A stretch of 64,000 bases of DNA, from positions 2,356,001 to 2,420,000 of the forward strand of contig NW_026781965.1 of assembly GCF_031769215.1 (NCBI RefSeq), in the 5' to 3' direction. The DNA is from Ylistrum balloti (Eukaryota). The notes beneath the pieces are model-generated. The model was given only the letters and a program-made list of their open reading frames with translations, made no database searches and had not been told where the DNA came from. A program made the position numbers and the translations under genes. Of this stretch, positions 1-64,000 are shown piece after piece; position 1 is the first letter of the stretch, and every line of letters starts with the position of its first letter.

Positions 1-1306
1 ACAAAATATCCACCAACGTCTCATCACAAACAGACAAAATATCCACCAACGTCTCATCACAAAAAGACAAAATATCCAACAACGTCTCATCACAAAAAGA
101 CAAAATATCCAACAAAGTCTCATCACAAACAGACAAAATATCCAACAACGTCTCATCACAAACAGACAAAATATCCACCAACGTCTCATCACAAACAGAC
201 AAAATATCCAACAACGTTTTATCACAAACAGACAAAATATCCAACAACGTCTCATCACAAAAACACAAAATATCCAACAACGTTTTATCACAAACAGACA
301 AAATATCCAACAACGTTTTATCACAAACAGACAAAATATCCAACAACGTCTCATCACAAAAACACAAAATATCCAACAACGTTTTATCACAAACAGACAA
401 AATATCCAACAACGTCTCATCACAAACAGACAAAATATCCAACAACGTCTCATCACAAAAACACAAAATATCCAACAACGTTTTATCACAAACAGACAAA
501 ATATCCAACAACGTTTTATCACAAACAGACAAAATATCCAACAACGTCTCATCACAAACAGACAAAATATCCAACAACGTCTCATCATAACAGACAAAAT
601 ATCCAACAACGTTTTATCACAAACAGACAAAATATCCAACAACGTTTTATCACAAACAGACAAAATATCCAACAACGTCTCATCACAAACAGACAAAATA
701 TCCAACAACGTCTCATCACAAACAGAAAAAATATCCAACAACGTCTCATCACAAAAACACAAAATATCAGACAACGTCTCATCACAAACCGACAAAATAT
801 CCAACAACGTCTCATCACAAACAGACAAAATATCCAACAACGTCTCATCACAAACAGACAAAATATCCAACAACGTCTCATCACAAACAGACAAAATATC
901 CAACAACGTTTTATCACAAACAGACAAAATATCCAACAACGTCTCATCACAAACAGACAAAATATCCAACAACGTCTCATCATAACAGACAAAATATCCA
1001 ACAACGTTTTATCACAAACAGACAAAATATCCAACAACGTTTTATCACAAACAGACAAAATATCCAACAACGTCTCATCACAAACAGACAAAATATCCAA
1101 CAACGTCTCATCATAACAGACAAAATATCCAACAACGTTTTATCACAAACAGACAAAATATCCAACAACGTCTCATCATAACAGACAAAATATCCAACAA
1201 CGTCTCATCACTAACAGACAAAATATCCAACAACGTTTTATCACAAACAGACAAAATATCCAACAACGTCTCATCACAAACAGTCAAAATATCCAACAAT
1301 GTCTCA
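1..1306. repeat. 33-bp minisatellite array (runs off window start)
   Basis: Unit acaaaatatccaacaacgtctcatcacaaacag; explains the 11-aa periodic ORFs (MRRCWIFCLFV). Confidence 0.97.
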
Positions 1307-23825: not shown

Positions 23826-26384
23826 CAGACTGACCGCAAAGAACCATAACTCTGCTTGAAATATATATACAATGTATGTGTGTTACTTATTAATTGTACC
23901 TATGTAACTGTTAACATTATTTTATCACCTATATTATACAAAGTATCACAACTTTTTCCTACCAATCTTTAGGAAACCAAAAAACATATGATACAGCGTT
24001 AAACAATTTCAGTAGAACAGCCATTCTTCCGATGAAATATTCATTAACGACCCGGTCTAAATGATTTATGTTCCTCATCTGTAACGTGGGGTTCCGTATT
24101 TTCAGAAGAAGGTTTTTTTTAATATCTTTACCATATACGTTAAAAGGATCTGGAGATAAAGATTCCACCTTCCAGAGTCAAAGTTTAACCTATCACTTTC
24201 ACTCTGAACAAAACTACGTTTATACCTGGTTTCTCATTTGTCGAAACAAAAATCTCTCTATTCTTCTAAAATAACTCACACGTTAAGGACCACACCAGGG
24301 TTTGTAAGGTTTCTTTACGTTTAAACCGCTGAAGACAATGAGTGGTGGTTCTAAATGTATTTATGTTGATACGGTCCTTGAACCTATCAAATGAATAATA
24401 TGTTATACTCAGTAAATCAGTCACTATGTATATTTCCTCTCCCCTGAAGTTGCCTTATCCCTAAAGGTGCTTTGTACATGGGCAATACATCATTGCGATT
24501 GTAAATTCAGGCTTGACAATCACGAGGCTTGATATACAGAAACAAAAAAAGGTGTAAAAAACATTCCTCGACAACTTTCTTATTCGTAAATTTTGTAATA
24601 TCTTAAAATCTGAAATTCATTTTTCTTAACTTTCGATGTAAGATAAATTAGTTAAGTAGACCAAACTTTGAGTAACTTTGGGTAATCTATCAACTATTTT
24701 GTCGTCTAATGACCCAAAACACATGCAGGGCATGTGCCATTTTATTAAAACGTCAACTTAATCTAGGAAGATGGGCTTGCACAATATATAAGCAGTCTAT
24801 AATATATTCATTTATGTTTGTTAAAGTTGTATGTAAATGTTAACATAAGTTTTGCTATCGGTCGTATTGTTTATATAAAACAATGTTAATTGATTATGAA
24901 ATCAGGATTTCGATATATTTTATAAAAGATATATTTCCGAAGTATTGATCTGAAGAATGAAGACTGTATATAGTAAACAATGGTAGGAGTTCAGTTAAGC
25001 ATGGCTACCCTTACACTTACTTCTGGTCGTACGTTTAATACTACTAACAATGAATTCTTTGTTTACATAGACTGTTAATCCTGTGCTTCTGGAATTTATC
25101 CAAGCTGTATTGTTCTGTTTCACAAAATTATTTTCACATGAATAAATCTCTTAACGTAGCGGTCACATTGAAAGTAAGCAAGGGCAAAGGTCAACCAGTG
25201 ACCAGGTACAAAGTTAGGAAACAACAACGGTATACATGTCGGTGTATGATATATGAATATCCTATCTCATCTGGCTTTGTCTGGTACAGTATTTAATCAT
25301 ACCAAAGAACATGACCGTTTTGAAGTATTCTAATAGAGTATAACAAATCCGTGCTAACGTGACGTAAAAGGTGTGAGAATCTTTGTAACACAAGGACGAG
25401 TAGACAAAATGTCAATGTCAGTTTACTCATGTAGTATCACTTTATATTGGTTATAAAATGTATATACCTGGTAATTCATTATGCATTTATTACGAAATTC
25501 TGCGTTGTTTGTTAAGGATTTGATTCCACAAGACTGAAGCAGTGATACAATAAGCACCATGTTACATGTTAAAAGCGTTCGTTACAAAATGCAAAAAATT
25601 AAAAACTTTATCATCTTTTTCATAGTTATGGTCATTTAGTGCCAGCATTTCTAGTTACTCGCTGGATGTTATGTGTATTTATTCTACGACCCAGTCGTTA
25701 ACATGAACACATGTGGACACATTGAATTTAAACACTTTTCTTTTCTATCTTTCTTGAGAGTACCAAATATGACATGGTTTTTTGGCGAATAAATACATTT
25801 GTGTTTCATTTTACTCTAAAGCATGCTAATTCTTCAATAAAAACCTTGTTATCTTCCCAAAGTATTAAAGTTTAAACAGTCATCCGCTGATATTCATAAA
25901 GTGTTACTGTTGTGAATACGACTTTTGTGTGACCAATACGACAAGAGTCAATTTGGATTTTGTATTTCAACATCAGACTTGCAGACACTTGTACGAATTA
26001 TTTACAGCAAAGTTTCACAGAGAACCGTCTTAACATAACAAACTTTTCTATACTTGTGTTGAATCCATAATGAATATGAATGATGGTGTATTCTGTGGTA
26101 ATGGGTAAGACTTATACATGTCCAAACATGGTTATGGTCCTTAAGGCTTTGTATTTCATGTACGTGCACAGTTAGAGAGCCTCCTAATGGCTTTATAATA
26201 TCAATTTCATATGGAATAGTGGAGAAGGTTAATGAGAATGTAATGAAAGTGGACAAAGCGACCATGAATAATAGAGATGCTATATTCACCATATCGGTTC
26301 AGCACATTGGTAGGACTATGGCAGCGCGCCAGGTCATCGATCATAATAACGTATGTACATTTATTTATACATGTGATACTGACC

Positions 26385-27240
26385 ATAATGTCAGCACGAC
26401 TGATTGTCACTGTACCACAAGGTCTGTACATTGATATACTGACCATCACAATGTCAGTCCCTATACCATACAGTCTGTACATTGATATACTGACCATCAC
26501 AATGTCAGTCCCTGTACCACAATGTCTGTACATTGATAAACTGACCATCACAATGTCAGTCCCTATACCACAATGTCTGTACATTGATAAACTGACCATC
26601 ACAATGTCAGTCCCTATACCATACAGTCTGTACATTGATATACTGACCATCACAATGTCAGTCCCTGTACCACAATGTCTGTACATTGATAAACTGACCA
26701 TCACAATGTCAGTCCCTATACCAAAATGTCTGTACATTGATAAACTGACCATCACAATGTCTGTCCCTATACCACAATGTCTGTACACTGATGTACTGAC
26801 CATCACAATGTCAGTCCCTGTACCACAAGGTCTGTACGTTGATGTACTGACCATCACAATGTCAGTACCTATACCACAATGCCTGTACATTGATGTACTG
26901 ACCATCACAATGTCAGTCCCTATACCACAATGTCTGTACATTGATGTACTGACCATCACAATGTCAGTCCCTATACCACAATGTCTGTGCATTGATATAC
27001 TGACCATCACCATGTCAGTCCCTATACCACAAGGTCTGTACATTGATATACTGACCATCACAATGTCAGTCCCTATACCACAATGTGTGTACATTGATGT
27101 ACTGACCATTACAATGTCAGTCCCTATACCACAATGTCTGTACATTGATGGACTGACCATCACAATGTCAGTCCCTATACCACAAGGTCTGTACATTGAT
27201 AAACTGACCATCACAATGTCAGTCCCTATACAACAAGGTG
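26385..27240. repeat. 51-bp minisatellite array
   Basis: Unit tgtacattgatatactgaccatcacaatgtcagtccctataccacaatgtc; explains the 335/343-aa ORFs. Confidence 0.96.
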
Positions 27241-27398
27241 TGATATTGACATTCCGTGGTTGTCACTCTGCCATATTCCCTCCTTACAAAACGAATATTC
27301 TTGTTTGATAACGAATGACACCCCTCCCTCCCTCCCTCATAATATCAAATGAACCACATTGCTGTTTCCCTAAATCATTCAACCAGACCTCTATCTTA

Positions 27399-28455
27399 AA
27401 CCCCATTCATACGACGCGATTTGCGTACCTCAGTATATTTTACACATATGTAACTTTACTTTCATGTGCAATTTTTGTTGTATGAACTGATTTGCTCACA
27501 TGTAAATTCTGCACAGTTGAATAAATTTGCACCTGGTCAGGACTAGGTCCAAATTAACTTTTGCATGCATGTTGTCGCAAATTATTTGCTCCCATTTGTA
27601 AATTTTGTCGTATGAACACGCAGCAAATTTACTTATGTAAGTATTTTGTCATGTATATTGCATCAGTCTCTATTTTAAGCGTTGTTATGGTTGTGTGTGC
27701 TTTGGCGGGGAAAATATGTCTATAAACATGACGCCTTTCAAACGACCTAACGAATTTTCAATGGTCATTCGTGCTCTACTTAAACGATAGTTGAAAGTAG
27801 ACCGAGTTTCTGTAAGGGTAGATCTGTTGATGTATGGCTTCAAAATCCAAGTCTTCAAAGGATACGCTAGGTCACCAAGAACTACTGGCATAGTACTTTC
27901 CCCAAATGGCTTTCGCCACTCTGGAAACAAGGAGCCATTATCTCCTTTGAGATAAATTTCCGAATTTGCATCATGGACCCTTCCTGGCCAAGTTATATTT
28001 ATGTCTTTAAAGATAAAGCTGTGGTCGCAAACATCCTGCAAAATCAAGGAGTAAAACCCTTTCCAGTTAAAGTAGCCTCCATGGGAATGCTTAGGAGCTA
28101 TGATGGAAATATGCATGCCAAATTTTTCAGAAAATTTTAAGAACGTTTCCTTTTTCATTCGAAAATTCTCATACCAATCTTCGTCCTTAAAGTCATTAAG
28201 TACGGTATTGTCGTACCATTCAGTGGATCGGACTTTCCTTCTAGTTTCCTTGATTCGGGAACATCCAATAGCTAATCCTATGCCCAAATAGCAAGGGAAT
28301 ACCCCTTTTTCTGTGAAAATTCAGCAGTCTGAATCGGTCCATCTCCATATTTCAAATGACAATGTGGGGATTTACTGACGGTACATAAATCGCTTGTGAA
28401 CGCATAGCAAATCAACTTTTATATATAAGCAAATTTTCGTCGTATGAATGGGGTT
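27399..28455 (-). mobile_element. Internally deleted PIF/Harbinger DNA transposon (1057 bp) with both TIRs and TTA TSD
   Basis: 18-bp TIRs aaccccattcatacgacg (27399) and cgtcgtatgaatggggtt (ends 28455); TTA at 27396-27398 and 28456-28458. Confidence 0.92.
27685..28287 (-). pseudogene. HARBI1-like (DDE_Tnp_4) transposase remnant
   Basis: NWKGFYS, WPGRVHDA, GDLAYPL, FNYRLSRARMTIEN; the segment holding the first catalytic Asp (GAIDG) is deleted. Confidence 0.9.
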
Positions 28456-28899
28456 TTAGATTCTTCTACCAGTTTAAGCATATCAATTCAGGGTTACAGT
28501 CTTATTGTCATTCCAGGAGTGAATTGAATGAATGAATGCCGATTGTGCAGATCAATCTATCTTGAATATCCGCCTTACTCTAACTCAAACCAACACCTCA
28601 GTTTTCTTGTTACAAGATGATGAGTGTAGATGAATAATCTGGTTGACAGTATCAGTACCATCCACCAAACTGTTGACATACCTATTAACGTTGCAACTGT
28701 GGCATAGTGTTTTATAAACACGTCCTGTTTTTTAAGTAAAGTTTTTTTTTTGCAATTGGAATCTAATACCTGAGATTTTATGTCAATTTGTTATGTATCA
28801 ACACATGCATTAACCGTTATGGTCAATAACTTGTATTGCTAATGACGATGAAAAATTGATATTATTTCCAATAACTGGAATTGTATCGAGAGTTGAGCA

Positions 28900-29712
28900 T
28901 CACAGGTGTGTAGTATACCACTGACAAGTAAATGTATGAAAGAATATTGTACCACTGACCACAACAGGTGTGTAGTATACCACTGACCACCACAGGTGTG
29001 TAGTATACCACTGACCACAACAGGTGTGTAGTATACCACTGACCACCACAGGTGTGTAGTATACCACTGACCACAACAGGTGTGTAGTATACCACTGACC
29101 ATCACAGGTGTGTAGTATACCACTGACCACCACAGGTGTGTAGTATACCACTGACCACCACAGGTGTGTAGTATACCACTGACCACCACAGGTGTGTAGT
29201 ATACCACTGACAAGTAAATGTATGAAAGAATATTATACCACTGACCATCACAGGTATGTAGTATACCACTGACCATCACAGGTGTGTAGTATACCACTGA
29301 CCACCACAGGTGTGTAGTATACCACTGACCACAACAGGTGTGTAGTATACCACTGACCACCACAGGTGTGTAGTATACCACTGACCACAACAGGTGTGTA
29401 GTATACCACTGACCACCACAGGTGTGTAGTATACCACTGACCACAACAGGTGTGTAGTATACCACTGACCACCACAGGTGTGTAGTATACCACTGACCAC
29501 AACAGGTGTGTAGTATACCACTGACCACCACAGGTATGTAGTAAACCACTGACCACAACAGGTGTGTAGTATACCACTGACAAGTAAATGTATGAAAGAG
29601 TATTAAACTACTGACCATCACAGGTGTGTAGTATACCACTGACCACCACTGGTGTGTAGTATACCACTGACCACTACAGGTGTGTAGTATACCACTGACC
29701 ACCACAGGTTTG
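28900..29712. repeat. 28-bp minisatellite array with periodic spacer
   Basis: Unit cactgaccaccacaggtgtgtagtatac; spacer acaagtaaatgtatgaaag recurs three times. Confidence 0.96.
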
Positions 29713-44900: not shown

Positions 44901-47900
44901 ACACTACTGAGATATGTTTCATTTTGAGCTTAATGAAAAATGTTTTTTTGAATACACTTAGATGGACCTTGCCCTCCCCCTTACCCCCAAATAAAAGAGA
45001 GAGAAAGAAAAAAAATACAAAAAAATCAATATTGATTACTACATAGCATGGTACTGACTGCCAGGTATAAAATCGTCATCAATGACTTACAAGTTTAAAC
45101 CATCAAAGAATATGTCATCATGAATATGTCATCAATCAATGGGAGATAATTTACCTATCATTATAAATCAGACCTCCTTCCAGACTGATTATTTTACTTA
45201 CAGCATCTTCTTGTAAGGCATCACGAAGGACTTGCTGAGCATCAATGCACTGTTTCAGCAAACTCTCATAAATTGACACTTTACTGTCAGTGCTCTCAGC
45301 ACTCTCGATCTCCTTAATACTCTCCTGTAGATTAAGCAGGAACAGGCGGACAGGCTCACTTTTTACAGGCACTGTACGTCCACGCCAAGGAAACTCTGAG
45401 AGAGTTGCTGCTTGCTTCTCTCTGGTCTGGGATAACAAATCCTGAAAAACAACACAAATATATACAAAACCAATGGGCCAACTAGTGTTCTTTATTGAAA
45501 ATGTACACTTCTATTACATACACAATAATTAAAAATTTGTAGAAATATTAGTTAACACAACCAATGTGTTTCCCATCCCTTCTTATTCAAGTTCAAAATT
45601 AACAGTACGTAACTATTTAAATAATGTTGGCTTGAAAATATCTGTGACTTTTTCTCAAATGTTTCCTTTGAAGACTGATAAGTTTCACCTAAGGAAGTTG
45701 ACAAGTGTTGGTAGGAACACTTAAATATATGGTAAGTACTTTTATTAAGGTGATCATTGACAAATGCAAAAGTCTTTCAAGTTTAATGCAGATGGCAATG
45801 TATGGTGGAAAGAACATCTAAAAATTCATTGGAAATTATGACAAAACTTTCAACATATCTATCATGTTTCGTTTCTTTGCACCTTTAGCAGAAGTAAAGA
45901 CTCCACAAAGACACTTTTAGATTCTAATAAGTATTCAGGTATGGTCTTACTTACATCTAGATGTGAGGTGAACTGATTTTCTCCTCCTCTACGCCTCATC
46001 TGCTTGAGTTCTGAGATGGCAGACTCATCTCCTATGTTGTAAGCGCAGTAACGTATGTTTGGTGTCACTTCCTCCACTTGTTGTAGGTACACAGACTGAA
46101 GTTCTTCTGTAAATGCACTGGCCAACTTCTCATATATTGTCCTGCAGACACAACAGTTACATATTGTTAGTGAACCTTAAACATCACACAGGGTTTTTAG
46201 GGAGTCAAATTCAAGAATATTGTAGGGTCTTTTAAGGGTAATAATCAAAAGAATATGGGTTCATTTTATTTTTCCATCAATATTTCAATTTCAAATGTCC
46301 TGATGGTGAGGCAGTAGTTTGTGTTGAACAATTGTTTCTCAGATATTTATATTTTTGTTCATTTTTTAAAAGCCCTCTCAAAATAAGAATTACAAAAAGG
46401 GAAACAATTCAGAAAACAAATTCTAAATGTATAGATTTAGGGTCTTTTTAGGGTTAAACCTCAAATTTAGGGTCTTTTTAGGGTTAAACCTAAAATTAAG
46501 GGTCTTTTTAGGATTAAACCTCAAACGTGTGTCTGTTTAATTTTAAACCTCAAATTAAGGGTCTTTCGTCACTTTAAATCAAATTTAGGGTGTTATTATG
46601 ACAATACTAAAAATTCTGCATCTTTTCAAGACTCTGCAATCTGTCAACCCAGACACAGGAGGTTATCCCATTTCTAGGAAAAATTAAGATGTAATCCAAA
46701 TGGTTTGGTATGTTATGCAGTTATCTATTTATATCTATATCTCAAAGACTATTGAATATAAACTTACTTGGTTTCTGTGTAGTATTCTATGGCACTTGCC
46801 CAGTTTTCACTTTCAAATTGCAGTCCAGCTTTCATCCACATCACATATCCCTGAAGAGATAAATCAGCCAATGAAATTCTGTTTTTCATGATATGATTTT
46901 GATAATTTTCAAGATAAGGCATCCTTTTACCATTTAGATATTACTATCATCATAATAAGATTCTCCCAGTAGACTTGTGTACTTCAGTGCTTGATTAAAA
47001 TCAATCATACTGGGATCTGTGTATATGTAAGACTAATGTTTTCACTAAAATGGTAATAGTAATGACGATTTTGTCGAGTTTTCGTTTCAGCTTGAATCTA
47101 AGCTGTTCTCTTTTAATTTCATATTAACTTTTTTTGTTCCCAAAGACATCTGTGGACGATGAAACTGCAGTTATGTGACAAGTAGAAAGACATAATCACG
47201 AGAATATATAGATATCAAAATATATAAATAAAAACTGTTTTTGCAATGTATCTGACCTGGCATTCTAATTTAGTCCTGGCATCACATTTAGGACTTTTAC
47301 ATAGCTCTTGAAACTCCTCTGCATATGTCACTGCCTTCCTGATACGTGACATCATATGGAATTTCTTCCGAGGCTCTGAATTGGCTTCTGCCTTTAATTG
47401 CATTGCATAAAACCATGCTCTCTCTGCACAAAACAGTGGCAAATGTAGAAATCTGAAAAAAAAAAAGAAAGTCAATCGCAATGTAAAATATTAAGATATC
47501 AATCAAATGGGATTCACGAATATAAATTTACTAGTAGGTATCTATTGAAAAACTGTCAACATGCAAGAGAATGAGTTTCCTTTGCTTGTCTTTTAGACTA
47601 TGTCACTGTGATTGGGAGTCTGAAGCATACATTTTACTTTCGAGTTACAAGGTCTCAACATGATAAAATAAAAGATATGGAAACTCTTTCATACACTGCA
47701 AAAACTTACAAAGAAATATCACTTTTGATATGTTAGTTTACCTGACATCTGTCAAATTTTCCATTTGAATCTTTTTTGGCTGCACTCTATGTTTAGTGCC
47801 TTGAGGAAAATGCAATGATTTTCTAATACGACGAATCCTTCTCGAACAGTAGCCCCTAGAAGAGAGATAATTAAAAGAAAATGATAAAAAGGCAATCGAC

Positions 47901-49824
47901 CATGAAACAAAACCACACAATACTGGAGTGATATTTTGATATTGCTCTTTGATTCCTTCTTTGTCCAGGGATGCTTTATTTAAAATCAGTAATTTATGAT
48001 TATATGTTATGTATGGTTTCTCTCTCTCTCTCTCATTTTTTTCTTCATTTTTTCTATTTCTTTGAGAGTTTGGTGAAATGGATGTAACAGGGGTCATTTT
48101 TTACTTCAAGACTTTTGTTATGGCTTAAATCTTGGACCTATGACATACTAGTCTTGCACATATCCAATTGAAGAGAAATCATCACTGTTACTGCTAGTAA
48201 TTGCCAGGGTTACATTGATTTGATTACATTGTTACTATTATGTTAAGATATCGAAGGTAATTCTTTTGTAAATTTAGAATGCAAACCATTTTATCCAAGA
48301 AAAGGATGTTGTATAATCAAGATAACTTGAAGGAGTGATATAAAAAGTCTACTTTCACAAGATGGTAAACTAGAAGAATTATGATTAAATATTATGGATA
48401 CAGACAGGTCCCTTAATTTGAAATCAGTAACTTACATATACTACAACTCCCCAACCCTCCTCCCCACCAAACAAAGTTTCTCTTTGCTGCAACAGACACT
48501 TTCCTTACAGAGAGGTTTTATATACACACTGCCATACCTGTATCTCTGAAAATCTCCATGTCTAAGGCCATGCTGCTGTCGTGCTTCTTTCACTAACTGC
48601 AAAACTGTTAACAACATTCTCAGTTAAGTATGTATATAATCACATGTGCAGCAAGACTGATTAAGATTTCCCACATTGCAAACTTTTTACAAAATATTGA
48701 TTTTATAAGTATTAGTATGACAATTGCAAATGAAGCAGAATTGGACTATATTGATCGTCGTCAATGACAGATAACTCCATTGGTAGAGCATCTATTTGGA
48801 GGGTCCCATGTTTGAACCCCATAGTGACCAACCCTTGTTTCAAGCAGAGTTCTTGAGATGGGGATACTCCCAGGACTGTAAATGGTTATGTCTTAAGGAG
48901 TGAAGACAATATCATTAAATTCTGACTATAAAAACAAAATCAAACATATAGACATTCCTGTCAGATTATGCACCCTCATTATGGTAGGATTTGTGATTGT
49001 GTGTACTTACTAAAAGGTAAATAAAGGGCATATTTTTATCAAAATTTATTTTTCCTATATGTTCATGAACCAAACACTGAAAATCAATCACAATTCATGG
49101 AATTCAACTTCCCATGTTTGCAGAGATATTTTAATATCGTATTAAATTTTTAATTTGCAAAGGGAACATATTCTTTTTCTTTATATAGAAATATGTTTTT
49201 TATCAATTAAATTTCCTTGTTTGCATCACTACAATTTTTGGGCAAGCAAGACCGCAATGTTTGAGCCCAGCTGGGAATCTATGACGTACAAATACAGAAC
49301 CAAACATCAAAATTTAAAACGGGTACAATTCACAAGGACCGAAACCCGGCTAAAATAAATATATTTCAAATTATCATTACACCCAGATCTTTTTTCAAAT
49401 TTTGGTAACCTGCTGGAGATTTGAAATGGAAAGAAAACATGATACCACCACCTATCAAACAAATATCTTTGTTAATTTCAACCATCATACTTCAAATCAC
49501 GCGACAAAGAAATAAAATAATCCTTGCATTTAAATATCAAGGCAATCGTGTGTATTAATAGACAGTACAGACCTAAACAGTCAAGTTACAATATAGATGA
49601 CATATGGTAAGGCTTATTTGCTTTCTGACGTAAAGTGGCCAGACCTACATCCTGCCGGCGGTGTCAGAAAAAATATACCTAATATGTTATTTAGTTTTTA
49701 ATTAAGTATTCTATGTAAATTTACCCTCGACAGTGAAGCTTTCGATTTCTGTGGTCTCTGCTGAAGATGCAGTTTCGTTACAAGTTTCAGTTTCACCGGT
49801 CATGCTTTCTCCACTCGCCGCCAT
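41976..49824 (-). CDS. SRP68: Signal recognition particle subunit SRP68, complete, 12 exons, about 604 aa
   Basis: Exons 49824-49725, 48604-48538, 47855-47742, 47452-47257, 46850-46768, 46141-45955, 45441-45202, 44762-44541, 44142-44048, 43761-43620, 43408-43277, 42212-41976 sum to 1815 nt in frame. Motifs QQHGLRHGDFQRYRGYCSRR, AERAWFYAMQLK, EPRKKFH, PIPCRPLFFDLA. Confidence 0.97.
46435..46590. repeat. 30-bp intronic minisatellite containing TTAGGG
   Basis: Unit atttagggtctttttagggttaaacctcaa. Confidence 0.85.
48771..48822 (+). mobile_element. Degenerate tRNA-like SINE head in SRP68 intron 1
   Basis: A-box-like ctccattggtagagc and B-box-like gtttgaaccc. Confidence 0.4.
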
Positions 49825-54500: not shown

Positions 54501-56384
54501 ATTCGTAGGATTTTAAGAACAAGGTTATCACTATAAACATTGTAACACTATTACATATTCCACAGACAAATTGCAGGAAACCTTATTTAAAACATAAACA
54601 ATATGACATTTTTCATATTAACAGGTTTTATCAAGCAAATAGAAACAAAGCACTATTAAATGATTTAATGCATTCCTGTCCTGTAAGACTTGTATGCTTT
54701 AAAGGCAAAATTTGATTATGTTGAAAGTCGTGTACCTAATGAATAGAAACTATAATTCAACAACATGATCAACAATTTGTGATAAAAGGGTTTCTGAAAC
54801 CTGCACCATGTTTAATATTCTGACAACTGTCAATGTTGTACATTGATTGTAGGTATCACCATTAAACTATACTGTTACGTCTAGTAACAGCACTGAGTGT
54901 GCCAGAGACAAAAGTAATCCTTCATCTGCTGGAATCATCATCATGAAGACAAAAAACAAATGAAAACACAGCAAAAAATATATCAAATCAATACTTATGG
55001 TAATCATATAAAACTGTTTTCTGAAATACCCATGTTACAAGACCGGTAGTATTCATAGTTTAAAATAATACATAGTATTAACAAACCTTTGTATATTTCA
55101 GAAACAATTCACCTTTCACTGGAATTCACAATTTAATCAATTACTAGTGAACACTTGCTAATGTAGTGTTCAACCCTCTGGTTTGTATCTCAACATATTA
55201 AAGAAATATACCATGAGTTCAAACTTATCAAAATCAATCTATTTCACTAAATAAGCACGACATAATAATTACATTTTAACTGTGTACATTTTGCTCAAAT
55301 AACTTAAAACAGAACAAACAAAACTAGCTTTGAATGAAAATAAACAATGAATCAATAAAAATGTCTCAATTTGGTTTTCCAGAATCTTCATATCATTCGA
55401 ATTCAGGAAATACTAAAATATTTTACAGAGTTTTGTCCGGAATCAATATGACATATAAGAATAATCAATTTACCAACTGAACGGTATGATATAAAAATCT
55501 TTCAAATTTTGAGAATTAAATGTATTTACAAGTATTTAATTTGATTATTTGATCATTTTCAATTTAGATTGATCCATAATTAAGGATGTTTAATATTATG
55601 AACTTTCATGTGTCCAAGTTAATCCTAATACTGAAAATGGAATTGTTGAAACCAAAAAAAAAGCCACACAAAATTTAAACATGAAAATAATTCACACAGT
55701 TTGTAGTTGTCATCTTACAACAACTCCTGTAGATGCGTTGTTGTGGTAATGCATGAAATCATTGCATAGCTTTTCATCTGTGAAAATAATTCAATACTTT
55801 GCTCTTCAAATATAGCACTGCTTTAGCACTTGCGTATGATAATATTGAATTTCTTAAACAAGATGTGTCATGAATGCCAATTTCCTCTCAATCTGTTTGT
55901 AAGTGCAGTAGATAAGGCACAAATATTGGTTAATAAAAAGCTAATCTCTGAAAAATACAGCACATGCACAAAATTTACAACAGTCTCAGCTCCTTCCTCT
56001 CTATTGTCAATAAAAAATATATCTGTGCATGATAGGGTTACATATATATCATAAACACAATATCAGGGGATCATCATTACAATTTTGATCACAAAATTAA
56101 ATGTAATCAGTTTAACTGTGATGTTATTTACAATGTCACATGAAAATTCTCCAGGAAAACTTATCGCCTTGTGTCTACAAGCTATGTCATATCTAGGTAT
56201 CGATATATAATGGAAATAATGTGCAAAACTCGATAAAATCTTGAATGTTTATATCAACACTGCTTCATTACCTAATTAACTTATAGCTTCAGTAAGAGAA
56301 AAATCTACTGCTTTAATAGTGCAATTTTCACGTGTTGATCAGCTGTCCATTTGTACAACACCTACAACCACATTACAGGGGTGT

Positions 56385-59300
56385 CTAACCAAGGAGCTTG
56401 AACATGGCCTGACTGTCCACAACTGCCCCACAGCCCTCGTACTTTTTCAGCAGACTAGCCCAAATGTAGCTACTTCTTAGCAGAAACTTGTTGCCTGTTC
56501 AAAGAAAATTAAAATCAATAAACTCTCAATCGGTGAAATATCTTTAATGATAATATCCATAATTGACAAGTATTTATACATGCTGTGTTTGGAAGCACTT
56601 TGTCAAAAAATTAAGACATTATTCTGTACCTTAATCTCTATCGAAAATTATCAAGAGTTGTCCTGTTAGTATACAAATGACAGATACCTGCTCTATCATT
56701 ATTACTATTCAGTATTCTAAAATAAAGTTCTGAAACCAGGTGATTGTGGTTTGTAGATAGATTACCTAGGCAATTACTAGTCATTATCATGACTGGCAGC
56801 AAGGTAAGATTATCATAGGAATGATATATTTATAACATTACTTTGTATATGTTAGTAAGAAGTTGTAGAGATTGGTATAGGTAATTTGTGTTAAAAGTGA
56901 ATATGTATTTATTAACTGCCACTAGAGACAAAATGCCTTTGGTATTTTCAGGCAGAAATAACATGTAGCTTACCAATAAGAATTATACCCTTGTTGGCCC
57001 GAGTGAGAGCCACATTAACTTGACAGTGATCATCACTGACTCCTAAGTGATCCTCACACCATTTCCTACCGCTGTATCTGTCTATCTTAAACTGAGGCAA
57101 TGACCTGACAGTGCTGTAGATCACATAATCCCAATCACCACCTGAAATTTAAGTAGATTATCAATAGCCATTTTTACCACAAAAATTTAAAAGTCAATTC
57201 AGTCCTCAATAGCCCATGCTATGTAGGAATGATGTAATTCAGAATTTTGGTTTTAGGTAGTGTTTTTGGTTTTACTAAAAAAAAGCATAAACAGTTTACA
57301 CTCTTATAATGACAGAGAAAAAGGTGATCATAAGATTTAGTCTCGGGTGACCTAATACCGACGATGAACCAATGCTGAACTAGTGTGATATTTACCATGT
57401 GCAGAAAGGACATCAGAGACTTGGATATTCTTATGACCAGCATTCAACAGCATCTTCCTGATTGTCTCACACTGTACTTGATACTGGGTGAAAACAATGA
57501 CTTTGGACTCGGGTACACCATGACGACTCACTAACTTACAGGCTGTGGTTACCTAGAGTTAAAGCAGAGTCACTCAAATTAAATCAAATGCAGTCAACAA
57601 TTCAATTTCAATTAACGATTCAAAGAAAATCTTCTTTTTCGATCAATTTGTTAGTTAATTTTACATTAAAGGTACTTTGAATGTTGTTCTTTTAATGTTA
57701 AAATTTTTGAGGTTTTATCAAGGGGATGTATTTTCGCAGCACCTATAAAATCTAATATTTCACCTTCATTAATATTTATTTCAAGATATCTGTTTTTAAG
57801 AGCACTTACAAAATCTACTATTTTATCTTTATTCGTATTTATTTTCAAGATATCTTTTTTTTCATAGTTTCAATCCATCCTTAAAATTAGTGATAAATAG
57901 AACTACTCAGGACATCTACAGTAATTAACAAATTCTACAGAATTCCAACATATGAATTTAAACATTATGACTTTCTAAACATAAATATTTAATAATTGAT
58001 GATGACCCTGAGATAATTTTAGTTGTCACCAATTTCTAGCTCTTGTTTAATTCCCTGTATGAGTTTGATCACTTTTTGAGACAGGATGTCACAGGGTCAT
58101 GGGTACACTATATGACACAGCATAACAAAATCTTAACTGATATAATAGGTTATGAAAAAGGTTTTATGTTAACAGCACAGCTAATTATTTCAATAAACAT
58201 TCTGAACTGTATTACTTCTGATTATCTTCGTTGTGGTTTTTTGCTTCATTACCATTATTAAATGTGTACACAACAAATATAAACATACAGATTGGGTCAT
58301 AGTTTTGTCCTTTCCATTATTTTTATACAATACTGCTATTGGGTAAAAAGCAGAAAAGACATTTCTCAAATTTGATAGAATTTTGGATACTTCTTTCCTT
58401 ACATTATCCACAAGGAAGAGAAACTTAGGCAACTTTGAGTTAAATGAATTATTGAATAAACTTAAGATTTACTGTTTCATACGTACTGCAATATTAACTT
58501 CCATGATGTTAACATGTGAGAGCTCCAATCCCCTGTCGGTCCTGATTGTAACAGCCTCCTCCTTGCCTACCACATGACAGAAAACAAAGGGTAGGTTTGT
58601 CCCTGCTGGCCAGATATTCACTTTTCCTGGGACTCTCTGTTCAATGCTCCCGCGCTGAGGAGTATTTTCGTAGAAATGTTCAAACGGAAAAGATGCTATT
58701 CCTTCATGCTGTAAGATACAAATGCACATCGTCGTTTCATTACAAAACTAACAAATGCAAATGTGATTAAAGAAATCTCCAATACAGACACTTATATATA
58801 TATATATTTTATAAAAATACACAAATTCCCAAGAAGTATATGGAAAAACATTATTTCAAAGCTGAAGATTGTAAAAAAAGAAATGGCCTAGAAATGGTGT
58901 GATTATCTATTCAGTATAAATTTTGACATGAATTATCCAGAACTTCATCATGGCAAGACAAAATTTTTTTTACATAAATCTACTTCACCTAGCTCTTTTA
59001 TGGATAAACTTCAACTCATGCTCTTCAACAACTTATCTTTGCTGCACTCACCATACGGAAGTATTTTTTGAGCACCAGGGCCTTTTCAATGTATCGCTGC
59101 AGTAGAGAGGTTGTGAGACCTAGGACCTTGGCTGTTGGGCTATTGACTTTATGGGGTAGTTGAATAGCATCACCAAGAATTGTAACCTGTTTAGCATTTG
59201 TATGGTGGATCACAGGGGTCATAGCTTCGGCTTCAGAACACATACCACAGTCATCAATTATTATCTGTAAATTTCAATGAAATCATTATTCACTATTACA

Positions 59301-62300
59301 TGCCAAATAAACATATCTTTTTACAAATCAGTACACTTACAGATAGTCCCATTGACTCTGCCACATACAATATCATGAGCTAGTTGGGATTCTTCTGTTT
59401 ACAATTGTTAGCAAACAAATACACAAATATACATCCATTAAATCACAATGCATTAATAAAATCCACATTATTGGAAATATTTCTAATTCAAACACCTTCA
59501 AACACTTAACAATACTGACCCCATGAGGTCAATTTGATTAAACCAAACTGATATAGTTGATTCTGTATAAAACGTTTACAATTATTATTCTACTAAACAG
59601 TAAATACAAATACCTGTTCCACGGCGATGTTTGATAGCTTGGAACTGGCTGCTGTATCACAGGTACACAGGATGATTTCTGCCATGCCTATTTCTGCTGC
59701 TTCAGCATCAGCCTTCATTTGACAGTACTCCTCTACCTGATCAGGGGAGATATCATCAGGATACATCTTAAAAAGCATGTCATACTCATTGATAGTCTGA
59801 CTGTAAGAGTTGGAGCCTCGTCGGATGACATGATGTAGAGAAGTGTCATTTGGAGAAGGGGAATGAAACTCTTCTCCTAATGGTTTCTGTTCATTACTTG
59901 GAACTGTTGACCCTGGTATGGGAAATTCCTTTTGCTCTATTTCTTCACTATACACTCTCAGTATTTTTGGACACATCTTTCCAAGATTTTGCAAGTTTGC
60001 TGAATCAAAAAGTTTAGATATTACACAGATGAAGCATTTAAATCAATGTTATTAAACAATTGTCTATGATGTGAACCAAACTTGATACTTCCTCTTCTGT
60101 TTATTAAAATTAATCACTATATGGTAAATACTAATCAATGTAAACTGTAAACACGAAGCAAAAATACCTTGTACATTATTTAAAACATCTAGACATAACT
60201 AACATACAACGACCACAGATTTTGACATTTCACTGAATCAAGATAAAAAAGAAAACACTTTGAAAAAGAATAATGAAAAATTCCTATTTTGCTGCTTTTG
60301 AGTGTAAGAGTCTTCATCTTTACAATTTCTGTCTTTGATTAAAATCTCAAGAAGTCTCAAGAAGGATGTAATTATGGACACCACACTGAGGGCAGTCTGA
60401 CCTTATAATACATACCTGTTAATATGTCTATTGACTGATCTGTGGGACCACACACTAACACCTGATTTTTACGGCCTCCTGAGGCATTACGTCGGGAGAA
60501 TAAGTAAGCAATGTAGCTGGCAATGAGCGATTTGCCCGAGGCTACTGGACCCTGTATGGCAGTAAAGCGTTGTTGGAGACTCATTCTTACTGCGTCGGCT
60601 TGGTCATCAGAAAGTCTTGGCATTCCTGTCACTAGCAGTTGTAACAAAGCATCTACATCACTTTTACCTAAAAATTAAATAGGGAAGATTATCAAAACAG
60701 TGAATATCATCAAAAAATATTCATACTATATATCTTATTTGATGAAAGAATTTTTGACTAAATGTATTTTCATAGTATTTATCAATTCTTATTTTCATTA
60801 TTATACTTTTCTAAGGGTCTTTTTCAAAATCTTTATTTCATTAAGTTTGCTCTCCATTTCATGATCAGTTACAACACAGATTTATGGTTTCATAGACATG
60901 TTTTGTTCTTTTCCTGTTTTTTTTTAAAGATAAACTACCTTTCTTTTAACATATCCTGAGTTTAAAAACTAGAACATGCTAAATAAATATGTTTTTAACA
61001 AATTAGTAAACTTACTGATAGCCCCATTGACTCTGCCACATACAATATCATGAGCTAGTTGGGATGCTTCTGTTAGCAATTGTACAGAATATTCCATTAA
61101 CCTGAAATAAAAAACAAAGTAAACAACTGTATATCCATGAAATAACAATGACAATAAAAAACAAAGTAAACAAATGTATATCCATGAAATATTTCTCCAC
61201 TGAATTTAAGAATGAAATGCTGTAACAATTGTACCTAACAAAATATATACACTATGCATAGAACAAAGTAAGGAATGGAACACTAAGGGCTATAATAACT
61301 TGATAAAACAGATCCAATTATTTTAAGGTGATTCATTACATTCAGTATGTCAAACATTTGTTTATTCAAATCTAAAAACTCCCGTTGCCATTTACTATAT
61401 CAATAACATGTATATTATAGTTAGTCTTTTTATGACAAAATATGAAGTGGATCATACTTGTCCTATGGAGTTTCATCAATCTTATACAATGGAAAAAATG
61501 CAAGATTCTACTTATCACATAACTAAAGACACTTTTAAAAACATACATGAAAACAGCGTTCACCAGACTGACATCAAAATAAAATTTGCAATAATTTTAT
61601 TCCATATCACTATCTTTTGGTGATGTCACAATGAAGACAACACCATGACATCAATATGTAATGACACATGTATCAGGCAATCCTAGACCATCACATTATG
61701 AAGTATGTATCAAACATGTTCTTCAAGACAGACACAGGTATTAGACATGCCCAGACCAACACAAGTAACAGCATATGTATTACACAGGTCCCAGACTGAC
61801 ACAAGTAACAGCATATGGATTACACATGTCCCAGACCGACACAAGTAACAGCATATGTATTACACATGTCCCAGACTAACACAAGTAACAGCATATGTAT
61901 TACACATGTCCCAGACTAACACAAGTAACAGCATATGTATTACACATGTCCCAGACTAACACAAGTAACAGCATATGTATTACACATGTCCCAGACTGAC
62001 ACAAGTAACAGTATATGGATTACACATCTAACAGCACATGCATCACACATGTCCTAGATTCAGTTAAAAGCACATGCATTACAAATATCTCAAGACTGAA
62101 AATGTAATAGCACATGTATTACACATGTCCCAGACTAACACCTGTTACATCACATGAATTACGCATGTCCCAAACTGTCGCATGTAACAGCACATGCATC
62201 ACACGTCCCAGACTAAAACATGTAACATTACATCATTAGACTTAGTGTGCACTTTGTATGTCAAATGAATCACCTGGATATCTGATTAATACTATCAGAA

Positions 62301-64000
62301 ATTTTGTATATATATATATATATATAATTACCTGTCATGAGAGGTCTTAGGGATCCATTCCAAAGTACAATGAAGACTGCTGCCCTGGGCACCAAGTAAC
62401 TGTGAGGGAATGGTGGAACTGTTGTGCACAAGAACAATATTAACCACGACATTATCCTGGACTCTCTTGACTGACACAATCTGACAATGTCCTACCCAAC
62501 ATATGGGCATCCCATTGTTTACTGACAATGCAACACTCTCATTCAAGCTGGGATCATCTGCAACCTCCAAGTTGTTGTATCGCACACAAAGAAAGTTCCG
62601 AAAATAGCTTGATGCAAACTTAGCATTATCAGGTATGAAAATATCAATGACGTTGACATCATTCCTAATTATAAACTGGCGTTCCATACAGAAGATTAAT
62701 GGGACTGAAAAACTTGCAACAATCTTTGAGGATCCTGCCAACTTTTCCTCTTTCCATTCCATACACAGATTTTTAACCACAACAGATTGACTTGACGTTA
62801 CAGCATTATGAGCAGATTCTAATCCTAGAACAGGTAGCCATAATTGTTGGTAGGAAGCTACATCTGGATAGGCTGTGTTATCTGCTGGAGGAATGCAGTG
62901 TGCAGAAAAACATGTGAGTGGATCGTCTCGGTGCTCTAGACAGACTTCCAGTGAAGGAGTCAAACACAGTAACTGTAGAGAAGGTGTGATGAGGCCATTA
63001 CGTAATTGAGCTGTCATCTGTACCTGTACAACATCACAGGTAGACAGGGTCAATTTAAAGTCTGCATAGTGTTTAATCTTGCCATTTAACTTATTGCCTA
63101 CAGACACATCTACTACATATCCTTCACTCAGAGCTGCCTGTTTAACATGAGGCCGCACTGACATAACAGCACTTTGAAGCTTCAGCATGTTCTCCTCTCG
63201 GATAGCACTCAGTAACCTTTGCCATTGAAATGCTGGAATTCTGGATATAAACCTGCTAGGATTTAGGACTTCAGTTGACAAGTTAGATATATCCCTGGTA
63301 GCTTTGGGCAATAAATCATATAGGCGATCTTGCCATGTCAGTTGAACACTACCATTATCATCTAATATAGGTTTCTCAGAAGTATGCAATGAAGGTAGCT
63401 GGATTCTGTTCTCAGAGATATCACCAATGGTTTGAAAGCACAATTGAATGTTATTTTCATCAAGATTCTGTATGATTGGATGTAGTACAAGTGGACGGGC
63501 TTTAAGAGCAGAGCTCAGATAGAGACTATGTACTGCTTTATCATACGAATCAGAATGTCGACAAACTGTAGTCAGGTGTATACATAGAGACTGGATTTCT
63601 TGACGACTGTATACAGAAGGTTGGTCTTCAATAACTGCTGTAACCAGGCGTGCCACTGCCAGATCAGCATACCTAGTGATAGGCTTGGTGAAAGAGACAT
63701 ACGGAGAGAGATTAAGTGAACTATGTCCCTGGTTTAACACAGTAGTATCTCCAGAACAAACAAAGACAGGCGGGTTCTGGATTTCATGTAGTTTAGATAA
63801 AGCAAGCATCAGCTGTGGATGGTATTCTGGTTCTATAACATAACTTTGAGAGTAAGCAATTTCACCTGCATCTGCTGCTTGGCACAGGGATTCCCATAAA
63901 ACAGTTAACATCTCAAAGGGATCTTGTGGTTTCTTTCCCAACTGTCGGATGTAATTCATAATACAGGTGCAGGCTAACTTACAATTACAGGTAGCGGAAC
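56385..64000 (-). CDS. HELZ2: HELZ2-like protein (RNB domain + C-terminal UPF1-like SF1 helicase), 5'-partial
   Basis: Exons >64000-62332, 61101-61016, 60667-60416, 59999-59614, 59264-59052, 58708-58487, 57552-57396, 57141-56974, 56494-56385 are phase-consistent through to TAG. Motifs PITRYADL, QGPVASGKS, IIIDDCGMC, LGDAIQL, QVNVALTRA, GNKFLL. Confidence 0.9.
59336..59412 (-). other. Intronic copy of an upstream HELZ2-like exon with its splice donor
   Basis: Near-identical to 61011-61086 (attgactctgccacatacaatatcatgagctagttgggat). Confidence 0.9.
61735..62225. repeat. 40-bp intronic minisatellite
   Basis: Unit acaagtaacagcatatgtattacacatgtcccagactaac. Confidence 0.93.

What the first reader, a model, noticed from the sequence alone, without database searches (positions are those of the whole stretch)
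56385..64000. Intact HELZ2-like gene with RNB nuclease and SF1 ATPase motifs both substituted: candidate double pseudo-enzyme RNA sensor
Seen: nine exons splice in phase with no stop or frameshift, so this is not a decayed pseudogene. Motif residues nevertheless differ from the family consensus I recall. RNB FTSPIRRYAD reads FTKPITRYAD, where the changed Arg matches the catalytically important Arg of RNase II enzymes. Walker A GPPGTGKT reads GPVASGKS. Walker B IIDEA/C reads IIIDDC, losing the catalytic Glu. QYRM reads YFRM, motif V SQGSE reads AHGGD and LGF reads LGV. The Walker A Lys, motif III Gln and motif VI NVALTRA are kept. Known: HELZ2 is an RNB + UPF1-like helicase linked to antiviral responses, and the Walker B Glu is needed for ATP hydrolysis in SF1 helicases. 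Inference: a paralog that binds ATP/RNA but does not turn over, acting as a clamp, decoy or scaffold in mollusc innate immunity.
Basis: partly seen in the sequence, partly recalled or inferred. Interest (0 to 1): 0.72.

Follow-up and report, generated by a model that had tools for sequence, protein, structure and literature searches.

The report
Mollusc HELZ2 paralogue with dead nuclease
This is the intact 3' two-thirds of a mollusc HELZ2-like gene from an old, conserved side-branch of the family that has lost the RNA-cutting centre and the key ATP-splitting residue of its second helicase, while relatives keep a normal first helicase, so it probably holds or remodels RNA rather than degrading it.

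Summary
On the minus strand, nine exons (63998..56388, stop 56387..56385) join with GT-AG sites and consistent phases into 1082 open codons. They encode the end of an RNB domain, an S1-like barrel and a UPF1-like helicase.

Relatives are mollusc, amphioxus and hemichordate HELZ2-like proteins.

The substitutions are not a one-off. The gene belongs to a well-supported clade (bootstrap 99) of 16 sequences from bivalves (Dreissena, Mya) and gastropods (Bulinus, Batillaria, Babylonia). In this clade:
- the RNB Asp cluster is lost;
- the motif-IV Arg is mostly lost;
- helicase-2 Walker B reads DD or DS instead of DE;
- helicase 1 stays fully canonical.

Selection evidence:
- one clade member pair gives dN/dS 0.16-0.24;
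- in the window gene, exons carry a quarter of the SNP density of introns.

The RNB part is almost certainly a pseudonuclease. Helicase 2 keeps the Walker A Lys, the motif III Gln and the Arg residues of motifs IV and VI, so it looks nucleotide-binding but hydrolysis-impaired.

"Double pseudo-enzyme" fits the RNB-helicase 2 module, probably not the whole protein. Expression and any immune role are untested. I found no paper describing this clade.

The parts
62332..63998 (-). Exon 1 (5' end cut by the window): last ~165 residues of the RNB domain, an S1-like beta-barrel, then the N-terminal barrel/stalk of helicase 2. 555 full codons plus 2 bases.
   Evidence: Open frame. Donor AG|GTAATT. Pfam RNB profile 290-325. 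PDB profile hits to DIS3L1, Ssd1, DIS3L2 and Rrp44. AF2 model pLDDT 87.7. Foldseek matches Ssd1/Dis3L2 for the N-terminal part and Sen1/SETX/UPF1 for the C-terminal part.
63663..63692 (-). RNB motif IV, FTKPITRYAD. Lys (63686..63684) replaces the family Ser; Thr (63677..63675) replaces the catalytic Arg (E. coli RNase II R500 position).
   Evidence: Aligned to FTSPIRRYxD of DIS3L1, Ssd1 and DIS3L2. Among relatives the Ser column is S in 128/146 rows and the Arg column is R in 130/146 rows.
61016..61101 (-). Exon 2 (86 nt), a poorly conserved linker before helicase 2.
   Evidence: Acceptor ...tttcag, donor A|GTAAGT. It shifts the phase from 2 to 1 as required; skipping it gives a stop. The spacing matches the 31-48 residue gap in relatives.
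60416..60667 (-). Exon 3: helicase-2 motif I (Walker A GPVASGKS, 60551..60528) and motif Ia (CGPTDQSID).
   Evidence: Pfam AAA_11 35 bits, above the 27-bit cut-off. Column tables.
59614..59999 (-). Exon 4: the insertion region of AAA_11 (UPF1-type 1B/1C region).
   Evidence: Pfam AAA_11 (weak). 34-43% identical to relatives in colinear order.
59052..59264 (-). Exon 5: motif II / Walker B IIIDDCGMCSE (second Asp 59252..59250 in place of Glu), motif III LGDAIQLP (59177..59154), and YFRM (59063..59052) in place of QYRM.
   Evidence: Aligned to IGHMBP2 VVIDECAQ...GDHKQLP and UPF1 ILIDESTQ...GDHCQLG. Column tables.
58499..58708 (-). Exon 6: start of the second RecA-like half of helicase 2.
   Evidence: 37-45% identical to relatives and contiguous with the E5 match. 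Splice sites.
57396..57552 (-). Exon 7: AAA_12 middle. It ends with the first half of motif V (SAH).
   Evidence: Pfam AAA_12 (weak). Column table.
56974..57141 (-). Exon 8: rest of motif V (GGDWDYVIYSTVRS) and motif VI (QVNVALTRANKG, 57022..56987).
   Evidence: Pfam AAA_12 32.5 bits, above the 27-bit cut-off. Up to 62% identical to relatives. Column table.
56385..56494 (-). Exon 9 and the TAG stop (56387..56385). An ATTAAA lies 70 nt downstream (56317).
   Evidence: It matches the C-terminal 33 residues of P0025.

Best explanation
The window holds the 3' two-thirds of a functional gene from a distinct, old molluscan branch of the HELZ2 family, called 'clade D' here. The family architecture is helicase 1, HELZ2 OB fold, RNB nuclease, S1-like linker, helicase 2.

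In clade D the RNB domain has become a pseudonuclease. The Mg-binding Asp cluster is gone in every member where that region can be seen. Here the motif-IV Ser and Arg that line the RNA 3' end are Lys and Thr.

Helicase 2 has lost the Walker B catalytic Glu. It is Asp here and in bivalve-type members, and Ser in some gastropod members. It keeps the Walker A Lys/Ser, the motif III Gln, the motif IV Arg and the motif VI Arg.

Helicase 1 lies outside this window. It is canonical in the sister gene and in all full-length clade members.

Most likely mechanism (inferred): helicase 1 remains the ATP-driven 5'-3' motor. The RNB-S1 channel and helicase 2 serve as RNA-holding, nucleotide-gated but slowly or non-hydrolysing modules. 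The protein would then bind, clamp or remodel RNA instead of degrading structured RNA as canonical HELZ2 does.

Shown: gene integrity, family membership, clade-wide motif loss, purifying selection.
Inferred: loss of activities, clamp-like action, any antiviral role.
For: Gene integrity.

Family:
- Per-exon Pfam hits RNB, AAA_11, AAA_12.
- 1433 relatives, named HELZ2-like in Dreissena, Mya, Babylonia, Saccostrea, Branchiostoma, Glandiceps and others.
- Architecture Hel1-OB_HELZ2-RNB-Hel2 in relatives.

Clade:
- 16 rows form one side of a branch, UFBoot 99 / SH-aLRT 97, in 100% of 200 bootstrap trees.
- The window is sister to P0007 (100/99).
- Bivalve-type and gastropod-type subclades are resolved (quick tree).

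RNB:
- Canonical rows read FT[VI]DPxxxxD[LI]DDA.
- Clade D rows read DLQHA, DLEMA, CNSRA, ENSIA, HSCRA and the like.
- Motif IV is degenerate in clade D but FTSPIRRY in 130/146 rows overall.
- In human HELZ2, D1601N, S1920L and R1923L each abolish RNase activity (PMC10516660).
- RNase II homologues lacking the DxxxxxDxDD residues are taken as pseudonucleases (PMC8097288).

Helicase 2:
- DE in 51/56 rows.
- Clade D members with a visible Walker B read DD or DS; all DD/DS rows belong to clade D.
- The window keeps 82 of 101 columns that are at least 90% conserved in canonical helicase 2.
- Changes cluster in motifs I, Ia, II, III, IV and V.
- DE2607/2608AA kills helicase-2 ATPase in human HELZ2.

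Helicase 1 is canonical in clade D: GPFGTGKT, FIDEAAQ, GDHxQ, QGKE, LNTALTR. This includes the sister locus L004.

Selection:
- dN/dS between clade members P0003 and P0157 is 0.16 (NG86) or 0.24 (YN00), and below 0.3 in every ~219-codon window, RNB included.
- In the window gene, DNA contigs from another individual show 4 exonic SNPs (3 synonymous, 1 Asp-to-Asn) against 36 non-exonic, Fisher p = 0.005.
- The window's end branch (0.52) is shorter than the median (0.70).
Against: - The Asp cluster and helicase 1 of this particular gene lie beyond base 64000 and were not seen. Their state is inferred from the sister gene and the clade.
- Glu-to-Asp keeps a carboxylate, and DD is itself conserved across bivalves and a gastropod. 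That could mean a working, if altered, active site rather than a dead one.
- Human HELZ2 tolerates one natural Asp-to-Asn change in its RNB centre, so sequence-based calls of inactivity can fail.
- No RNA evidence of expression.
- The nearest relative is only 39% identical over exon 1, so no orthologue-level dN/dS exists for this gene itself.
Confidence: 0.7

Rival explanations
1. Still an enzyme. Helicase 2 hydrolyses ATP using Asp as the general base, perhaps more slowly. The protein works as a two-motor helicase that has merely dropped the nuclease.
For: The Walker A Lys/Ser, the first Walker B Asp, the motif III Gln, the motif IV Arg and the motif VI Arg are all kept. DD is conserved rather than drifting in six clade members plus the sister gene. 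82 of 101 conserved helicase-2 columns are retained.
Against: No canonical family member among 51 rows uses Asp at that position. A sub-branch of the same clade has Ser there, which cannot act as a base. This gene also changes the motif V Gln and Glu, the invariant Walker A Gly, motif Ia Asn/Lys and the motif III His.
Confidence: 0.2
2. A young pseudogene or unexpressed duplicate whose frame has not yet been hit by a stop. The motif changes would then be the first signs of decay.
For: No RNA run was found. Several substitutions are unique to this gene (Walker A Gly to Ala, QYRM to YFRM, motif V QGGE to HGGD). The surroundings are repeat-rich, and a partial copy of exon 2 lies in intron 4.
Against: 1082 codons stay open across nine exons with eight intact GT-AG introns. 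SNP density in exons is about a quarter of that in introns, and 3 of 4 exonic SNPs are synonymous. The branch is shorter than the family median. The same motif losses occur in a clade that predates the bivalve-gastropod split and evolves at dN/dS 0.16-0.24.
Confidence: 0.05
3. A regulator of canonical HELZ2. The paralogue competes for the same RNAs or partners and shields them from degradation, acting as a decoy or dominant-negative rather than doing a job of its own.
For: Molluscs also carry canonical HELZ2-like genes (Saccostrea P0060, Lottia P0022). Clade D keeps the RNA-path scaffold of RNB, S1 and helicase 2 while losing chemistry.
Against: There are no interaction or expression data. A canonical helicase 1 under selection suggests an active role rather than passive competition.
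Confidence: 0.15

Closest known systems
Human HELZ2 (3'-5' exoribonuclease with two UPF1-like helicase domains; PMC10516660)
   Same: Same architecture in full-length relatives: helicase 1, OB_HELZ2, RNB, helicase 2. The window gene nests among proteins that NCBI names HELZ2-like. The helicase-2 and RNB scaffold residues are conserved.
   Different: Human HELZ2 is an active RNase, and both of its helicases are active ATPases. Here the motif-IV Ser and Arg are replaced; in human HELZ2, S1920L and R1923L each abolish RNase activity. Relatives also lack the Asp cluster. Helicase-2 motif II is DD, not DE.
Yeast Ssd1 and other fungal Dis3L2-derived pseudonucleases (PMC8934651, PMC8097288; PDB 7am1)
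   Same: An RNB fold kept under selection after the catalytic residues were lost, and presumed to work as an RNA binder. Ssd1 is also the top structural match for the exon-1 model.
   Different: It is a different RNB lineage (Dis3L2, not HELZ2), is fungal and has no fused helicases. Ssd1 keeps the motif-IV Arg pair (FTAPMRRYAD), which this gene has lost. PMC8097288 found the active-site signature in all metazoan Dis3L2 homologues it examined.
UPF1 / IGHMBP2 helicase cores (PDB 2xzo, 4b3g)
   Same: The SF1B UPF1-like fold and motif order match. Exon 5 aligns motif II and motif III residue by residue. The N-terminal barrel resembles Sen1, SETX and UPF1.
   Different: Those enzymes have DE in motif II, GDHxQL in motif III and QYRM in motif IV. 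Here these read DD, GDAIQL and YFRM.

Membership tests
HELZ2 family | RNB domain followed by a UPF1-like SF1 helicase domain (helicase 2) in one polypeptide | tested here: met
   Per-exon Pfam gives the RNB C-end in E1 and AAA_11/AAA_12 in E3-E8. The exons are in phase.
HELZ2 family | Upstream helicase 1 and the HELZ2-specific OB fold (PF25049) | not testable with these tools
   These lie beyond base 64000. They are present in the sister gene P0007/L004 and in full-length clade members.
HELZ2 family | Phylogenetic placement among HELZ2-like proteins | tested here: met
   Trees of the exon-1 region place the window inside a lophotrochozoan group of HELZ2-like sequences, with deuterostome HELZ2-like proteins outside it. 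Names come from NCBI and UniRef.
HELZ2 family (as an active 3'-5' exoribonuclease) | RNB motif IV Ser and Arg (human S1920, R1923) | tested here: not met
   The window reads FTKPITRYAD against FTSPIRRYxD in relatives. The human mutants S1920L and R1923L are inactive.
Active RNase II/RNB nucleases | DxxxxxDxDD magnesium-binding Asp motif | not testable with these tools
   The motif lies outside the window. It is absent in all 12 clade D members examined, including the sister P0007, which reads ENSIA.
UPF1-like SF1B helicases (catalytically competent) | Walker A GxxxxGK[ST] | tested here: met
   GPVASGKS fits the pattern. The family-invariant middle Gly is Ala.
UPF1-like SF1B helicases (catalytically competent) | Walker B / motif II Asp-Glu | tested here: not met
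   The window reads IIIDDC. Glu occupies this column in 51/56 relative rows and in the UPF1 and IGHMBP2 structures.
UPF1-like SF1B helicases (catalytically competent) | Motif III Gln, motif IV Arg, motif VI Arg | tested here: met
   GDAIQLP, YFRM and NVALTRA keep these residues.
UPF1-like SF1B helicases (catalytically competent) | Motif V Gln-Gly-x-Glu | tested here: not met
   The window reads HGGD across the E7/E8 joint. Relatives have Gln in 8/8 and Glu in 34/34 aligned rows.
Ssd1-type pseudonucleases | Descent from Dis3L2 | tested here: not met
   The gene groups with HELZ2-like proteins, not Dis3L2. It resembles Ssd1 in logic only.

The most novel reading that the evidence does not exclude
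An ancient molluscan HELZ2 paralogue, older than the bivalve-gastropod split, has been converted from an RNA-degrading machine into a non-degradative device. It has one live motor (helicase 1) coupled to a dead nuclease channel and to a nucleotide-binding but non-hydrolysing second helicase. It would act as an ATP-gated RNA clamp, a sensor, or a protector against canonical HELZ2. To my knowledge from the papers searched, this would be the first animal RNB pseudonuclease clade and the first inside the HELZ2 family.
Probability: 0.35. Interest if true: 0.7.

Novelty: new variant of a known kind. Interest (0 to 1): 0.55.

Why it matters
HELZ2 is an interferon-induced enzyme that degrades structured RNA by coupling two helicases to an RNB nuclease. 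How the three modules cooperate is still open.

Here evolution has already done the domain-inactivation experiment: a clade with the nuclease off, helicase 2 impaired and helicase 1 kept, all under purifying selection. This gives a natural separation-of-function variant to study.

It also extends RNB pseudonucleases, so far described mainly in fungi, to animals. It further warns that automatic names such as "3'-5' exoribonuclease HELZ2-like" or "exoribonuclease R", given to clade members in databases, are probably wrong about activity.

For mollusc immunity, it shows that the HELZ2 repertoire contains functionally different paralogues that should not be pooled in expression studies.

Tried and rejected
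- The word-based protein search with exon 1 found only one relative, because of its length filter. The exhaustive search was therefore needed.
- No RNA run holds the locus. The single holder is a DNA run whose contigs cover the introns, so splice junctions and expression could not be checked with reads.
- phmmer of exon 8 against the PDB gave only chance hits, because the query is too short.
- Earlier findings near this place: none. Word look-ups gave no HELZ2 note.
- The paper search for HELZ2 in molluscs found only incidental mentions. A second search was too broad to be useful.
Rejected: the relatives' consensus matches it.
- I considered that the substitutions might be usual for mollusc HELZ2. 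Rejected: the oyster and limpet canonical paralogues keep the standard motifs.
- I considered independent decay in each lineage. Rejected in favour of a single origin, on the tree.
- The joined spliced protein was never built for, or sent to, any search, fold or family tool. Every exon was searched separately by reference, so there is no whole-helicase-2 structure model and no whole-protein profile search.
Full report
**What is in the sequence.**
The feature lies on the minus strand. Six-frame reading of 56300-64000 gives a series of open segments. I fixed their borders by inspecting each junction.

The model has nine exons:
- E1 63998..62332
- E2 61101..61016
- E3 60667..60416
- E4 59999..59614
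- E5 59264..59052
- E6 58708..58499
- E7 57552..57396
- E8 57141..56974
- E9 56494..56388, followed by TAG at 56387..56385

All eight introns begin with GT and end with AG. The phases fit (2, 1, 1, 0, 0, 0, 1, 1). No exon body holds a stop, and the sum is 1082 codons. E1 is open up to the window's last bases, so the gene continues beyond 64000. Leaving out the small E2 would create a stop at the E1/E3 joint, which argues that E2 is real. The window contains no N.

The spliced protein was never joined for any search, family scan or fold. 

**What the exons encode.**
Pfam scans of the separate exons gave:
- the last 36 positions of the RNB profile in E1;
- AAA_11 in E3 (35 bits, above the cut-off), E4 and E5;
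- AAA_12 in E7 and E8 (32.5 bits, above the cut-off).

A profile of E1 plus its one word-search relative aligned motif IV to DIS3L1, Ssd1, DIS3L2, Rrp44 and RNase II structures. E5 aligned residue by residue to motifs II and III of IGHMBP2 and UPF1.

An AlphaFold model of E1, built on a 45-row alignment, was confident (pLDDT 87.7, pTM 0.86). By Foldseek its front part matches the RNB C-terminus plus S1 domain of Ssd1, Dis3L2 and Rrp44. Its rear part matches the N-terminal barrel region of Sen1, SETX, UPF1 and Aquarius.

E1 therefore carries the RNB end, an S1-like barrel and the accessory barrel of helicase 2. E3 to E9 form the helicase-2 core.

**Relatives.**
The exhaustive profile search found 1433 relatives. 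Every window exon matches them in colinear order. Exon ends coincide with adjacent residues in the relatives.

Named relatives:
- 'helicase with zinc finger domain 2-like' of Dreissena polymorpha, Mya arenaria and Saccostrea echinata;
- '3'-5' exoribonuclease HELZ2-like' of Babylonia areolata, Glandiceps, Ptychodera, Branchiostoma, Montipora and Oscarella;
- unnamed proteins of Batillaria, Bulinus and Lottia.

Full-length relatives show helicase 1, OB_HELZ2, RNB and helicase 2. HELZ2-like membership is therefore sound. Earlier notes of this scan call the genome a scallop; I did not test that.

**The motif substitutions, measured against real relatives.**
Projecting relatives onto the window exons gave these column counts.

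| Motif | Window | Relatives |
|---|---|---|
| RNB motif IV | FTKPITRYAD | Ser 128/146, first Arg 130/146 |
| Walker A | GPVASGKS | GPPGTGK[TS]; middle Gly 50/50 |
| Motif Ia | CGPTDQSID | CGPSNKSVD |
| Motif II | IIIDDC | Glu 51/56 |
| Motif III | GDAIQL | GDHKQL; Gln kept |
| Motif IV | YFRM | QYRM; Arg kept |
| Motif V | SAHGGDWDY | SSQGGEWDY; Gln 8/8, Glu 34/34 |
| Motif VI | NVALTRA | kept |

Of 101 helicase-2 columns that are at least 90% conserved in canonical relatives, the window keeps 82. Most of the 19 changes fall in motifs I, Ia, II, III, IV and V.

One caveat: GPVASGKS still fits the general P-loop pattern GxxxxGK[ST].

**The key new result: a whole clade shares the losses.**
The closest relatives also have degenerate motif IV, for example FTQPVSSY, ITQPLSCY and CTDTLNSY. 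Where the upstream RNB region can be seen, the canonical FT[VI]DPxxxxD[LI]DDA is replaced by strings such as DLQHA, DLEMA, CNSRA, ENSIA and HSCRA.

Members whose helicase 2 is visible read DD in Walker B:
- Dreissena
- Mya
- P0023
- Bulinus (two proteins)
- the sister locus L004

Three members read DS instead: Babylonia, P0178 and P0010. No canonical row does either.

A careful maximum-likelihood tree of the exon-1 region puts the window and 15 such sequences on one side of a branch. Support is UFBoot 99, SH-aLRT 97, and the split appears in 100% of 200 bootstrap trees. The window is sister to P0007 (100/99). The clade has a bivalve-type and a gastropod-type subclade (quick tree with 75 rows). 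Deuterostome HELZ2-like proteins lie outside, so the root is on the other side.

The simplest reading is one loss event before bivalves and gastropods split.

**Helicase 1 is not degenerate.**
In Dreissena, Mya, Batillaria, Bulinus, Babylonia and P0178, helicase 1 reads GPFGTGKT, SNSAAD, FIDEAAQ, GDHxQ, NYR, QGKE[FV]RA and LNTALTR. These are the same motifs as in canonical proteins.

The sister gene's contig L004 shows the same three-part pattern with the same exon layout:
- canonical helicase-1 exons;
- a large exon with dead RNB;
- helicase-2 exons with GPAGSGKT and VIIDDCGM.

'Double pseudo-enzyme' thus describes the RNB-helicase 2 module, not the likely state of the whole protein.

**Is it under selection?**
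Two clade members from different runs (P0003 and P0157, loci L002 and L003) differ at 213 of 3939 coding bases. Their dN/dS is 0.16 (NG86) or 0.24 (YN00). It stays below 0.3 in each ~219-codon window, including the dead RNB domain. Their flanks are only 85-90% identical.

For the window gene itself, the only public run holding it is a DNA run of another individual. Its contigs cover the introns. That run shows 4 exonic differences in 1579 bases (three synonymous, one Asp-to-Asn) against 36 in about 3828 non-exonic bases (Fisher p = 0.005). The window's terminal branch is shorter than the family median. A decaying pseudogene is therefore unlikely.

**What the literature says about these residues.**
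In human HELZ2 both helicases are nucleic-acid-stimulated ATPases, with helicase 2 the more active. DE-to-AA changes in motif II inactivate them. The helicases let the RNB domain degrade duplex RNA (PMC10516660).

D1601N (the third Asp), S1920L and R1923L each abolish RNase activity. The three-residue spacing of S1920 and R1923 fits the S-P-I-R of motif IV. The window has Lys and Thr at exactly these two positions. This mapping is my inference; I did not align the human sequence.

The same paper shows that human HELZ2 tolerates one natural Asp-to-Asn change, a warning against over-reading single substitutions.

RNase II homologues lacking the DxxxxxDxDD residues are treated as pseudonucleases. 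Until now the described cases are fungal Ssd1-type proteins, and all metazoan Dis3L2 examined kept the signature (PMC8097288; PMC8934651).

I found no paper linking HELZ2 to pseudonucleases or describing this mollusc clade. The library is incomplete, so this is absence in what I could search.

**Most likely mechanism, and its limits.**
- Shown: gene integrity, HELZ2-family descent, clade-wide loss of RNB catalytic residues and of the helicase-2 Walker B Glu, retention of nucleotide-contact residues and of the fold's scaffold, a canonical helicase 1 in relatives, and purifying selection.
- Inferred: the RNB-S1 part binds RNA without cutting it. Helicase 2 binds nucleotide and RNA but hydrolyses poorly or not at all. 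Helicase 1 supplies the motor. The protein would then hold, clamp or remodel RNA, or compete with canonical HELZ2, instead of degrading structured RNA.
- The conserved DD could alternatively mean a slow but real ATPase.
- An immune role is only an analogy with vertebrate HELZ2.

**Verdict.**
This is a new variant of a known kind: a conserved, apparently undescribed HELZ2 subfamily with a dead nuclease and an impaired second helicase. Interest is moderate to fairly high, limited by the lack of expression and biochemical data and by the missing 5' part of the gene.

Noticed in passing
window 59318-59408 (copy) and 60993-61083 (original): A 91-nt stretch covering most of exon 2 plus 23 nt of its downstream intron is repeated at 91% identity inside intron 4. 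In the exon-2 frame the copy carries TAA in place of CTA. It would break the frame if spliced in, so it looks like a relic of a small internal duplication. Contigs of the DNA run break at both copies.
   Followed up: partly
window 61710-62253 (intron 1 of the gene): A tandem array of about ten or more 40-nt units (up to 95% alike) fills much of intron 1 and produces short repeated ORFs on both strands. Contig depth rises there, so the unit is probably repeated elsewhere in the genome.
   Followed up: no
window 47741-48097, minus strand: The end of a 119-residue ORF matches the N-terminus of Pfam SRP68 (profile 8-49, 28 bits, above the cut-off). This is probably the first coding exon of an SRP68 gene, the next gene downstream on the same strand.
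   Followed up: partly
window 6151-6948 (minus) and 27688-28287 (minus): Two transposase remnants. One is a Tc1/mariner-type ORF (DDE_3 plus the HTH of Tc3). The other is a Harbinger/PIF-type DDE_Tnp_4 fragment.
   Followed up: partly
window 585-1103, 9781-10344, 26207-27308, 28839-29705: Long minisatellite arrays that read as open repetitive ORFs on both strands. The 56 kb downstream of the gene is repeat-rich and otherwise gene-poor.
   Followed up: no
relatives P0009 cluster, P0179, P0025 and others: Databases name clade D members 'exoribonuclease R' (JGI metagenome calls) or '3'-5' exoribonuclease HELZ2-like' (Babylonia), although they lack the catalytic Asp cluster. The P0009 cluster has 85 members, many from metagenomes, so animal DNA of this gene is common in environmental or host-associated data sets.
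   Followed up: no
relatives P0155 (residues 132-163) and P0179: Full-length clade D proteins of Dreissena and Babylonia carry N-terminal TPR repeats (Pfam TPR_1 and others) ahead of the zinc-finger and helicase-1 region. Whether this is specific to the clade was not examined.
   Followed up: no
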